Assembly: GCF_039654945.1 (NCBI RefSeq) | Contig: NW_027361924.1 | Coordinates: forward strand, 5,084,001 to 5,148,000 | Source of the DNA: Dendrobates tinctorius | Taxonomy: Eukaryota | Length of the DNA stretch: 64,000 nt | Reading direction: 5' to 3' | In this document: positions 22,101 to 25,100 of the stretch, one piece after another | Numbering within the stretch: position 1 is the stretch's first letter | Layout of the letters: each line of letters opens with the position of its first letter | Program-made: the position numbers and the translations under genes | The notes under the pieces: model-generated | Databases searched by the model: none | What the model was told of the DNA's origin: nothing | Seen by the model: only the letters and a program-made list of their open reading frames with translations

Positions 22101-25100
22101 TATACAGGCGGCTGTTAGGTGATGCACAGGTCGCCCTCTCTCATACACAGGCGGCTGTCAGGTGATGCACAGGTCCCCCTCTCTCTCATACACAGGCGGC
22201 TGTTAGGTGATGCACAGGTCCCCCTCCCTCTCATATACAGGCGGCTGTTAGGTGATGCACAGGTCGCCCTCTCTCATACACAGGCGGCTGTCAGGTGATG
22301 CACAGGTCCCCCTCCCTCTCATATACAGGCGGCTGTTAGGTGATGCACAGGTCGCCCTCTCTCATACACAGGCAGCTGTCAGGTGATGCACAGGTCCCCC
22401 TCTCTCTCATACACAGGCGGCTGTTAGGTGATGCACAGGTCCCCCTCTCTCTCATACACAGGCGGCTGTTAGGTGATGCACAGGTCCCCCTCCCTCTCAT
22501 ATACAGGCGGCTGTTAGGTTATGCACAGGTCACCCTCTCTCATACACAGGCGGCTGTCAGGTGATGCACAGGTCCCCCTCTCTCTCATACACAGGCGGCT
22601 GTTAGGTGATGCACAGGTCCCCCTCCCTCTCATATACAGGCGGCTGTTAGGTGAGGCACAGGTCCCCCTCCCTCTCATATACAGGCGGCTGTTAGGTGAT
22701 GCACAGGTCCCCCTCCCTCTCATATACAGGCGGCTGTTAGGTGATGCACAGGTCCCCCTCCCTCTCATATACAGGCGGCTGTTAGGTGATGCACAGGTCC
22801 CCCTCCCTCTCATATACAGGCGGCTGTTAGGTGATGCACAGGTCCCCCTCCCTCTCATACACAGGCGGCTGTCAGATGTTGCACAGGTCCCCCTCTCTCT
22901 CATACACAGGCGGCTGTCAGATGTTGCACAGGTCCCCCTCTCTCTCATACATAGGTGGTCGTGAGGTGTTGCACAGTTCTCCCTGTTGCTCATGCAGAGG
23001 AGGCTGTCAGGTGATTCACAGATCCCCCGCTCTCTCATATGCAGGCGGCTGTCAGGTGATGCACAGGTGTCCCCCTCTCTTATACACAGGCACCTGTGGA
23101 GTGCTGCAGAGTTCCCCTCTATCTCTAATACACAAGCGACTTTCAGTTGATGCACGGGTCTCGCTCTCGTATTTGGGCGGCTATCGTGATGCACAGGTCC
23201 CCCTCTCATACACAGGTGGCTGTCAGGTGATGAACAGTTCTCCCTCTCTCCCCAATACACAGGAGGCTGTGAGGTGATGCATAGTCCCCCCCCCCCTCTC
23301 TCTCTAATATATAGGCGCCTGCCAGGTGATGCACAGTTTCCCCTCTTTCTCATACACAGGTGGCTGTCAGGTGATGTACAGGTCCCCCTCTCTCCCTAAT
23401 ACACAGGAGGCTGTGAGGTGATGCATAGTCCCCCCCCCCCCCCTCTCTCTCTAATATATAGGCGCCTGCCAGGTGATGCACAGTTTCCCCTCTCTCTCAT
23501 ACACAGGTGGCTGTCAGGTGATGCACAGTTCCCCCCCTCGCTCTCCCTAATATACAGGCGCCTGCCAGGTGATGCACAGGTCCCTCTCTCTCATACACAG
23601 GCGGCTTTCAGGTGATGCACAGGTCCCCCTCTCGCTCTTATACAGGCAGCTTTCAGGTGATGCTCTGGGGCCCCCCTCTCTGATACACAGGCGGCTGTGA
23701 AGTGATGCACAGGTCCCCCTCTCTCCCTCATACACAGGCGGCTGCCAGATGATGCACAGGTCCCCCTCTCTCACTCATACACAGGCGGCTGTCAGGTGAT
23801 GCACAGGTCCCCCTCTCGCTCTTACATAGGTGGCCGTGAGGTGATGCACAGGTCCCTCTCTCGCTCATACACAGATTGCTTTCAGGTGATGCAGATCTCT
23901 CCCTCTCTCATATACAGGCGGCTGTGAGGTGATGCACAGTTCTCCCTCGCTCATACACAGGCGGCTGTCAAGGGATGCACAGGTTCCCCTCTCGCTCTGT
24001 CATAAGTGTCTGAGGTGATGCATAATTCCCCCTCACTCATATACAGGCAGCTTTCAGGTGATGTTTTGGTGCCCCCTATCTGATACACAGGCACCTGTCA
24101 GGTGATGCAGAGGTCCCGCTCTCGCTCTTACACGGGCGGCTATCAGGTAATGCACAGTTCCCTCTCTCACTCATACACAGGCAGCTGTCCGGAGATGCAC
24201 AGGTCCCCTTCTCTATCACCGTGTATTGTACATGTTATATATTATCCTCTGTTCTGTATTTCAGGTCAAATGCTTAGGCGGCTTTCAGGTGATGCACAGT
24301 TCCCCCTCTCTGTCATACACAGGCAGCTGTCAGGTATTGCAGAGTTCCCCCTGTCTCCCTAATACACAGGCGAGACTGTCAGGTGATGCACAGTTACCTC
24401 TCTCTCCCTCATACACGGGCAGCTATCAGGTGATGCACAGTTACCTCTCTCTCCCTAATACACAGGCGGCTTTCAGGTGATGCAGAGTTAACCCTCTCGG
24501 TCATACACAGGCGGCTGTCAGGTGATGCACAGTTCCCTCTCTCGCTCATACATAATCGGTTGTCAGGTAATGCACAGTTCCCTCTCTCGCTCATACCCAG
24601 GCGGCTTTCAGGTGATGCACAGTTTCCCCTCTCGCTCATACACAAGCGGTTATCAGGGGATGCACAGTTCCCCCTCTCTCTTAAACAGGCAGCTGTCAGG
24701 TGATGCACAGGTCCCTCTCTCGCTCATACACAAGCGGATGTCAGGTGATGCACAGTTCCGGCTCTCGCTCATACACAAGTGGTTGTCAGGTAATGCACAG
24801 TTCCCTCTCTCGCTGATACACAAGTGGTTGTCAGGTAATGCACAGTTCCCTCTCTCGCTCATACACAAGTGGTTGTCAGGTGATGCACAGTTCCCTCTCT
24901 CGCTCATACACAAGTGGTTGTCAGGTGATGCACAGTTCCCCCTCTCGCTCATACACAAGTGGTTGTCAGGTGATGCACAGTTCCCTCTCTCGCTCATACA
25001 CAGGCGGCTGTCAGGTGATGCACAGTTCCCTCTCTCGCTCATACACAAGCGGTTGTCAGGTAATGCACAGTTCCCCCTTTCGCTCATACACAAGCGGTTG

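What the first reader, a model, noticed from the sequence alone, without database searches (positions are those of the whole stretch)
24220..24294. Copy of the COPS3 exon-2 acceptor trapped in the intronic satellite defines a frame-preserving 24-nt candidate micro-exon (copy 1)
Seen: the non-repeat sequence before true exon 2 (CCGTGTATTGTACATGTTATATGTTCTGTATTTCAG|GACAAATG, acceptor 29510/29511) also occurs here as CCGTGTATTGTACATGTTATATATTATCCTCTGTTCTGTATTTCAG|GTCAAATG, with a longer pyrimidine tract than the real site. The satellite resumes a few bases later and supplies CAG|GTGATG, delimiting 24265-24288 (24 nt, phase 1-1, no stop). Inference: inclusion would give [32 protein letters not shown], a chimeric exon made from a duplicated acceptor and a minisatellite donor. 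If the donor were ignored, the frame would stop at 24362 (NMD candidate). The AG|GT junction also resembles a recursive splice point, though GTCAAA would be a weak donor. This would be exon birth by array expansion in an essential gene.
Basis: partly seen in the sequence, partly recalled or inferred. Interest (0 to 1): 0.8.

Follow-up and report, generated by a model that had tools for sequence, protein, structure and literature searches.

The report
Duplicated decoy splice acceptors in COPS3
Two young tandem duplications inside a repeat-filled intron of the frog COPS3 gene copied the exon-2 splice acceptor twice, but the assembled transcripts examined join exon 1 straight to the real exon 2, so the copies look like silent decoys and not a newborn micro-exon.

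Summary
The acceptor region of COPS3 exon 2 (36 nt of intron plus the first 8-14 nt of the exon) occurs three times, with acceptors at 24264|24265, 27036|27037 and 29510|29511. Both upstream copies carry a 10-nt pyrimidine-rich insertion. Both are followed 24 nt later by a satellite-borne CAG|GTGATG. The 24-nt interval keeps the frame, has no stop, and would add GQMLRRLS.

The two decoys sit in a roughly 2.8-kb tandem duplication (95-100% identical) inside a 45-bp minisatellite. That satellite and its 41-bp relative fill 73% of the 13.3-kb intron 1.

On a rough weight matrix the decoy acceptors beat the true one. They are not special, though: the satellite supplies about 130 acceptor-like and 160 donor-like sites.

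mRNA contigs from two independent studies join exon 1 (16231) directly to 29511. No micro-exon form was shown, but contigs cannot exclude rare isoforms, and no raw reads were available.

The best reading is a splice-junction-straddling tandem duplication absorbed into the existing intron, leaving decoy sites that are skipped. Exon birth is unsupported.

The scan had already noted copy 2 (s1-386209) and similar splice-site minisatellites elsewhere in this genome (s1-376993, s1-382990).

The parts
16177..16231 (+). Coding part of COPS3 exon 1 (ATG at 16177), donor AAG|GTGAGG after 16231, phase 1
   Evidence: The loose-end consensus of RNA contigs equals 16200-16229, which is unique in the window.
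16232..29510 (+). COPS3 intron 1, 13,279 nt, 73% minisatellite
16895..18446 (+). 41-bp minisatellite subarray (about 38 copies), same family as the 45-bp array
18447..21358 (.). Decayed hAT-like transposon inserted into the array: perfect 15-nt terminal inverted repeats CAGGGCTGTGGAGTC and an 8-bp target duplication ATACACAG/ATATACAG
21369..29469 (+). 45-bp minisatellite (about 180 copies). Each unit carries an acceptor-like CTCATACACAG|G and a donor-like CAG|GTGATG 11 nt apart.
22780..25590 (+). Copy A of the roughly 2.8-kb tandem segmental duplication (approximate ends); contains decoy 1
   Evidence: 95-100% identity per 100 nt to copy B at offsets of 2768-2820
25594..28400 (+). Copy B of the roughly 2.8-kb tandem segmental duplication (approximate ends); contains decoy 2
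24219..24264 (+). Decoy 1, 3' splice-site region: copy of the 36 nt before exon 2 plus a 10-nt insertion ATTATCCTCT
24265..24288 (+). Decoy 1, 24-nt open interval (GTCAAATG from exon 2, then satellite). Contains UAGG. Followed by CAG|GTGATG.
26991..27036 (+). Decoy 2, 3' splice-site region, identical to decoy 1
27037..27060 (+). Decoy 2, 24-nt open interval, identical to decoy 1
29475..29510 (+). True exon-2 3' splice-site region (36 non-satellite nt)
29511..29640 (+). True COPS3 exon 2 (130 nt), spliced to exon 3 at 30133
   Evidence: (joint 29640->30133 in three runs)

Best explanation
These are non-functional decoy (pseudo) 3' splice sites left by tandem duplication at the edge of an unstable intronic minisatellite. 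Step 1, inferred: a tandem duplication of array, branch-point and pyrimidine-tract region, AG and the first 8-14 nt of exon 2 placed a truncated copy of the intron/exon junction upstream of the intact one. The array therefore resumes right after GTCAAATG(CTTAG). Step 2, shown by sequence identity: a younger tandem duplication of about 2.8 kb doubled that decoy. Using the most downstream acceptor restores the normal message, so both events were absorbed into intron 1 without changing the mRNA. The decoys have good core signals but lack an exon body. Only 24 nt separate the acceptor from a donor with a mismatched +5/+6. A UAGG silencer-like motif lies inside the interval, and there is no UGC micro-exon enhancer motif upstream. 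Exon definition therefore selects the 130-nt real exon 2, just as it ignores the satellite's roughly 130 acceptor-like and 160 donor-like sites. Shown here: the anatomy, the duplication structure, and the canonical junction in the assembled mRNAs of two studies. Inferred: the order of events, the reason for skipping, and that any use of the decoys is splicing noise.
For: The junction sequence occurs three times against 0 expected by chance. The alignment shows homology that includes shared satellite variants upstream (GTCCGG, CTTCTCTAG) and ends 8-14 nt into exon 2, after which the satellite resumes. The 2.8-kb units are 95-100% identical with several indel offsets. Decoy 1 and decoy 2 differ at 2/118 flank positions and 0/55 core positions, whereas decoy and true site differ at 13-15/118 flank positions plus one substitution and a 10-nt indel in the core. 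RNA contigs X7 (study P3) and X16 (study P6) are spliced through 8 GT..AG introns, and their overhang before 29509 is CGTTAACAGCGTCAGGCAGCTGTCCTCTCA, which equals exon 1 at 16200-16229. There are 163 donor-like and 130 acceptor-like sites in intron 1, nearly all satellite units. The exon-2 peptide is 42/42 identical to the solved CSN3, so this N-terminal region is under strong constraint. Hellsten et al. 2011 (PMC3265369) show that duplicated splice signals allow a tandem duplication to be spliced out with the protein unchanged. An earlier follow-up in this genome found a 56-acceptor array spliced only at its last copy (s1-376993; a lead, not independent proof).
Against: By a rough weight matrix the decoy acceptors (12.4 bits) are stronger than the true acceptor (9.6 bits, the weakest of nine verified COPS3 acceptors). 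They also have a plausible branch point (ATTAT, A at -21). The donor CAG|GTGATG (7.0 bits) falls within the range of real COPS3 donors (4.9-12.3). Sequence alone therefore predicts some use. Inclusion would be in frame and hence not removed by nonsense-mediated decay. Only contigs were available, and contigs drop minor isoforms. One run's contig (X8) starts at 29507 with TCAG before exon 2 instead of continuing into exon 1; this fits either unspliced RNA or the micro-exon end and is unexplained. The deepest run (X5) gave only short contigs, and 97 loose ends were not displayed.
Confidence: 0.7

Rival explanations
1. A real minor or tissue-restricted cassette micro-exon. The decoy acceptor and satellite donor are used together in a fraction of transcripts and add 8 residues (GQMLRRLS), or 16 if both copies are used, between Q18 and G19 of CSN3. 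This would be exon birth by array expansion.
For: The core signals are good on a rough matrix (acceptor 12.4 bits, donor 7.0 bits). The interval is 24 nt, in phase 1-1 and open. A second open option of 69 nt also exists. Contigs cannot exclude minor isoforms, and the X8 contig start at 29507 is compatible with this reading.
Against: The canonical junction is the assembled form in two studies. No UGC motif lies within 50 nt upstream, whereas 74-79% of SRRM3/4-dependent micro-exons have one between the branch point and the AG. UAGG lies inside the 24 nt. The same donor occurs 126 times in the intron, and about 130 other acceptor-like sites are ignored. The neighbouring 42 residues are 100% conserved from frog to the solved CSN3, so an insertion there is likely to be disfavoured.
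Confidence: 0.15
2. A recursive-splicing waypoint. Exon 1 is first joined to a decoy acceptor, and the regenerated 5' splice site AAG|GTCAAA is then used to remove the rest of the intron. This leaves the canonical mRNA and splits the 13-kb repeat-filled intron into steps.
For: A juxtaposed AG|GT is present at both decoys, created by the A-to-T difference at exon position +2. The outcome would be invisible in mature mRNA, so one search does not exclude it. The mechanism is known (PMC8605326, PMC5126111).
Against: The regenerated donor scores 3.3 bits, below every verified COPS3 donor (4.9-12.3), with C at +3 and A at +5/+6. The competing downstream donor scores 7.0 bits, so an RS-exon would be expected to be included, and inclusion is not seen. 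The intron is only 13.3 kb; from general knowledge, vertebrate recursive sites are described mainly in much longer introns.
Confidence: 0.05
3. Assembly artefact. One or both decoy copies, or the 2.8-kb duplication, result from mis-assembly of a long minisatellite or from two haplotypes placed in tandem.
For: Long arrays are hard to assemble. Copies A and B differ by only about 1-2%, a level that haplotypes could show.
Against: There is no gap between the copies; the only N run is at 52806-52943. The decoys differ clearly from the true site by a 10-nt indel, a substitution and a different downstream sequence, so at least one decoy cannot be a mis-placed copy of the true junction. The two units differ by substitutions and several indels.
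Confidence: 0.05

Closest known systems
Tandem duplication containing splice signals that is removed by splicing (Rogers model; Hellsten et al. 2011, PMC3265369)
   Same: A tandem duplication carries its own splice signal, so the redundant copy can be spliced out and the protein stays unchanged. One search shows an unchanged mRNA.
   Different: In that model an exonic AGGT is duplicated and a new intron is born. Here the duplication straddles an existing intron/exon boundary, so no new intron arises. The existing intron simply grows and keeps spare acceptors.
Pseudo-exons and decoy splice sites in vertebrate introns (for example Kralovicova & Vorechovsky 2007, PMC2095810)
   Same: Consensus-quality sites lie inside an intron and are not used in the mature mRNA. 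Selection of the true exon depends on auxiliary sequences and exon definition.
   Different: These decoys are exact recent copies of the authentic site and not chance matches. They provide an internally controlled comparison of the same acceptor with and without its exon body.
Neuronal and endocrine micro-exons (SRRM3/4-dependent, 3-27 nt)
   Same: The size is 24 nt, the interval is frame-preserving, and it is flanked by AG and GT.
   Different: There is no UGC motif upstream, no inclusion in the available transcripts, no conservation evidence, and the origin is a recent duplication.
Recursive splice sites and RS-exons
   Same: A juxtaposed AG|GT with a downstream donor that could define an RS-exon.
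   Different: The regenerated donor is weak, the intron is short, and no intermediates could be examined.
Other splice-site minisatellites noted in this genome (GLYR1 intron 14, s1-376993; ZNF intron 1, s1-382990)
   Same: Intronic tandem arrays carry copies of splice signals. In the GLYR1 case the follow-up reported splicing only at the last copy.
   Different: There the repeat unit itself is the splice signal. Here an unrelated 45-bp satellite carries two embedded copies of the junction, made by kilobase-scale duplication. Those notes were not re-tested here.

Membership tests
Cassette micro-exon | Flanked by AG acceptor and GT donor with usable consensus | tested here: met
   Acceptor 12.4 bits and donor 7.0 bits on a rough matrix, against real COPS3 ranges of 9.6-15.0 and 4.9-12.3.
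Cassette micro-exon | Length of 27-30 nt or less, a multiple of 3, and open | tested here: met
   24 nt, phase 1-1, no stop.
Cassette micro-exon | Observed inclusion in mRNA | tested here: inconclusive
   The contigs of X7 and X16 show only the exon 1 to exon 2 junction. Contigs drop rare forms, and no raw reads were available.
Cassette micro-exon | UGC enhancer motif between branch point and AG (SRRM3/4 class) | tested here: not met
   There is no TGC in the 50 nt upstream of either decoy.
Recursive splice site / RS-exon | Juxtaposed 3'ss and a strong regenerated 5'ss | tested here: not met
   AG|GT is present, but AAG|GTCAAA scores 3.3 bits, below all nine real donors.
Recursive splice site / RS-exon | Splicing intermediates, lariats or a sawtooth read profile | not testable with these tools
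Splice-junction-straddling tandem duplication absorbed by splicing | Duplicate contains the splice signal and lies in tandem with the source | tested here: met
   The three copies are co-oriented at spacings of 2772 and 2484 nt. The satellite resumes directly after the exon fragment.
Splice-junction-straddling tandem duplication absorbed by splicing | Mature mRNA unchanged | tested here: met
   The canonical 16231|29511 junction is seen in contigs from two studies. This applies to the major form only.
Intron gain by duplication (Hellsten/Rogers) | A new intron is created within a former exon | tested here: not met
   No new intron arises; the duplicate lies inside pre-existing intron 1.
Decoy / pseudo splice site | Consensus-like site inside an intron that is not used in the mature mRNA | tested here: met
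   with the caveat about rare isoforms.

The most novel reading that the evidence does not exclude
The decoys are used at a low or tissue-specific level. That would give CSN3 isoforms with one or two in-frame GQMLRRLS inserts in an otherwise invariant N-terminus. It would be an exon caught at birth, assembled from a duplicated acceptor and a minisatellite donor, in an essential and highly conserved gene.
Probability: 0.12. Interest if true: 0.6.

Novelty: new member of a known kind. Interest (0 to 1): 0.27.

Why it matters
The locus is a clean natural experiment on 3' splice-site choice. The same acceptor, slightly improved, is offered three times in one intron. It appears twice without its exon body, 5.2 and 2.5 kb upstream, and once with it. 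The assembled mRNAs use the copy with the exon body. This illustrates the dominance of exon definition over core-site strength and over a first-come-first-served order. It also shows how duplications that straddle a splice junction can be neutral and enlarge introns in a repeat-rich amphibian genome. If raw reads ever show inclusion, the locus would document exon birth from a satellite. As it stands, it is an instructive but ordinary by-product of minisatellite instability, and this genome has several similar cases.

Tried and rejected
The tool itself advised laying the parts beside it. No reads or contigs were laid on the decoys themselves, and no independent DNA check of the array was possible.

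2. The look-up of sequencing runs gave only Logan contigs and no raw reads, so junction counts and rare isoforms could not be measured.

3. MaxEntScan and SpliceAI are not available. I used log-odds matrices built from consensus frequencies recalled from memory. These are good for ranking only and are not calibrated scores.

4. A search of the protein collection with the conceptual peptide of exon 1, micro-exon and exon 2 was left out. A reference-based query with the exon-2 peptide alone would only see fragments of 23-73 residues and was judged not worth its cost. The large representative search was not used because the protein is not in question.

5. I tested the idea that the satellite derives from the acceptor region, or the reverse, and rejected it. 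The 45-bp unit and the 36-nt junction flank are unrelated, and GQM is ancestral CSN3 coding sequence.

6. I tested the idea that the decoys are unique splice-like islands in the intron and rejected it.

7. The species was not verified here. Earlier notes call this genome the dyeing poison frog.

Full report
**Observation**

COPS3 lies on the + strand of the window. Exon 1 has its ATG at 16177 and ends at 16231 (AAG|GTGAGG, phase 1). Exon 2 starts at 29511 behind ...CCGTGTATTGTACATGTTATATGTTCTGTATTTCAG and ends at 29640.

RNA contigs confirm the exon 2 to exon 3 joint 29640->30133 and seven further GT..AG joints. The gene's identity is secure. The exon-2 peptide is 42/42 identical to residues 20-61 of solved COP9 signalosome subunit 3, and a later exon matches at E = 2e-34.

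The 22-mer that begins the non-satellite flank of exon 2 occurs exactly three times, at 24219, 26991 and 29475, with none expected by chance. The last 14 nt of the acceptor also occur three times. The alignment shows three things:

- Both upstream copies carry the whole 36-nt flank with a 10-nt insertion (ATTATCCTCT) in the pyrimidine tract.
- Both carry the AG and the start of exon 2 with one change (GGTCAAATG against GGACAAATG).
- After a further CTTAG, which may be exon-derived (ACTCAG) or satellite-derived (ACACAG), the satellite resumes with GGCGGCTTTCAG|GTGATG.

So are the frame (phase 1-1, 24 nt, GQMLRRLS) and the stop, which is TAA at 24360-24362.

**Context**

Intron 1 is 13,279 nt, and 73% of it is one minisatellite family. 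A 41-bp subarray lies at 16895-18446, and a 45-bp array of about 180 units lies at 21369-29469. All 180 matches to the unit core fall in this intron, on the + strand.

A 2.9-kb hAT-like element separates the two arrays. It has perfect 15-nt terminal inverted repeats and an 8-bp target duplication, ATACACAG/ATATACAG. The units on both of its sides have the 41-bp spacing. It therefore inserted into an array that already existed.

**How the decoys arose**

A sliding comparison shows that about 22,780-25,590 and about 25,594-28,400 are tandem copies. They are 95-100% identical per 100 nt, with offsets that shift between 2768 and 2820. Each holds one decoy near its middle. Decoy 1 and decoy 2 differ at 2 of 118 flanking positions and at none of the 55 core positions.

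Against the true junction, the decoys differ at 13-15 of 118 satellite positions. They still share private variants such as GTCCGG and CTTCTCTAG. In the core they differ by one substitution and the 10-nt indel.

The simplest history has two steps (inferred):

1. An older tandem duplication had its right breakpoint 8-14 nt inside exon 2. This left a truncated junction upstream of the intact one, which is why satellite sequence follows the exon fragment.
2. A recent 2.8-kb duplication then doubled that decoy.

Use of the downstream acceptor restores the normal mRNA, so both events can be neutral. This is the logic by which duplicated splice signals let a tandem duplication be spliced out (Hellsten et al. 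2011, PMC3265369). Here, however, no new intron is created.

**Splice-site quality**

I used rough log-odds matrices built from remembered consensus frequencies, so they serve for ranking only.

| Site | Score (bits) | Comparison |
|---|---|---|
| Decoy acceptors | 12.4 | Nine verified COPS3 acceptors span 9.6-15.0 |
| True exon-2 acceptor | 9.6 | Lowest of the nine verified acceptors |
| Decoy donor CAG\|GTGATG | 7.0 | Real COPS3 donors span 4.9-12.3 |
| Regenerated recursive donor AAG\|GTCAAA | 3.3 | Below every real donor |

The insertion also creates a plausible branch point (ATTAT, A at -21) ahead of an unbroken pyrimidine-rich tract. This was read from the sequence.

The decoys are not special, however. 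The intron holds 163 donor-like sites of at least 6 bits, of which 126 are exactly CAGGTGATG. It also holds 130 acceptor-like sites of at least 8 bits. Nearly all of these are satellite units, whose CTCATACACAG|G and CAG|GTGATG lie 11 nt apart.

Other exons that could start at a decoy:

- 69 nt, open, with the weaker donor CAG|GTATTG.
- 105 nt, in copy 2 only, with donor CAG|GTGAGA after 27141; it contains the stop.
- Several longer ones, all containing the stop.

**Expression**

Only Logan contigs were available, and no raw reads. I therefore laid four runs on 29400-33050.

X7 (study P3) and X16 (study P6) each have an mRNA contig of about 1.05 kb spliced through exons 2-8. The contigs continue 139 and 166 nt upstream of 29509. 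Their overhang reads ...CGTTAACAGCGTCAGGCAGCTGTCCTCTCA. That is exon 1 at 16200-16229, unique in the window, with the final AG absorbed by the alignment. The canonical 16231|29511 junction is therefore the assembled, major form in two independent studies.

No overhang ending in ...GGCGGCTTTCAG was displayed. Three caveats apply:

- Contigs drop minor variants, and bubble-popping could hide even a sizeable minority.
- 97 loose ends were not shown.
- The very deep run X5 gave only short contigs.

The X8 contig begins at 29507 (TCAG, then exon 2). Four letters fit the intron end and the micro-exon end equally well. X8 does have low intronic depth, so unspliced RNA is the simpler reading, but the point is unexplained.

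**Why the decoys are probably skipped (inference from established splicing knowledge)**

- A 24-nt interval is too short for ordinary exon definition.
- Most SRRM3/4-dependent micro-exons have a UGC between the branch point and the AG: 74-79% in the preprint 10.1101/2024.09.17.613571. No TGC lies within 50 nt upstream of either decoy.
- The interval contains UAGG, a known silencer-type motif. This is from my own knowledge and was not tested.
- The donor mismatches U1 at +5 and +6.
- The real exon 2 offers 130 nt of conserved exon body.

The perfect conservation of the adjoining 42 residues suggests that an 8-residue insertion would be disfavoured.

**Rivals**

| Reading | Probability | Main point |
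|---|---|---|
| Silent decoys from tandem duplication | about 0.7 | Canonical junction in two studies; satellite full of ignored sites |
| Minor or tissue-specific micro-exon | about 0.15 | Cannot be excluded with contigs |
| Recursive splicing through the AG\|GT | about 0.05 | Regenerated donor is weak, and the stronger downstream donor should force inclusion, which is not seen (concept: PMC8605326, PMC5126111) |
| Assembly artefact | about 0.05 | At least one decoy differs clearly from the true junction, and the two units differ by substitutions and indels with no gap; copy number remains unverified by independent DNA |

**Comparison and novelty**

This is a new example of known kinds: pseudo or decoy splice sites, and tandem duplications that splicing absorbs. 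The same scan noted copy 2 of this locus (s1-386209). It also noted arrays of copied acceptors and donors elsewhere in this genome (s1-376993, s1-382990). In one of those, a follow-up likewise reported splicing only at the last copy. Those notes are leads and were not re-tested here. They also name the genome as the dyeing poison frog, which I did not verify.

**Verdict**

- The anatomical inference is correct.
- The exon-birth interpretation is not supported by the available transcripts and remains untested for rare forms.
- Interest is modest.

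Noticed in passing
window:18447-21358: hAT-like element with perfect 15-nt terminal inverted repeats (CAGGGCTGTGGAGTC) and an 8-bp target duplication ATACACAG/ATATACAG. It is inserted into the 41-bp part of the minisatellite, so the array is older than this insertion.
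   Followed up: partly
window:21369-29469: Every 45-bp satellite unit carries an acceptor-like CTCATACACAG|G and a donor-like CAG|GTGATG 11 nt apart. Intron 1 holds about 130 and about 163 such sites above my rough thresholds, yet the mRNA contigs are clean.
   Followed up: partly
window:29490-29646: By the rough matrices, the true exon 2 has the weakest acceptor (9.6 bits) and the weakest donor (TCT|GTGAGT, 4.9 bits) of the verified COPS3 sites, despite sitting behind 8 kb of splice-like satellite.
   Followed up: no
window:29507: In run X8 the main COPS3 mRNA contig starts at 29507 (TCAG before exon 2) and does not continue into exon 1 as it does in X7 and X16. Four letters cannot distinguish unspliced RNA from the micro-exon end.
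   Followed up: no
window:27133-27147: Copy 2 has a substitution (CAGGCGAGA to CAGGTGAGA) that creates a strong donor-like site after 27141 (10.7 bits), absent from copy 1. It would close a 105-nt pseudo-exon that contains the in-frame TAA.
   Followed up: partly
window:40880-43480: Another long tandem array downstream of COPS3 stays open in several frames (repeating ...CVRIVAPGCHP... / ...PRVPPMCAYSS...). It was seen only in the six-frame listing.
   Followed up: no
window:33818-34600: A 261-residue open frame inside a late COPS3 intron looks like a retroelement reverse-transcriptase fragment (…[13 protein letters not shown]…). It was not searched.
   Followed up: no
window:52806-52943: A run of 138 N, either a gap or masked.
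   Followed up: no
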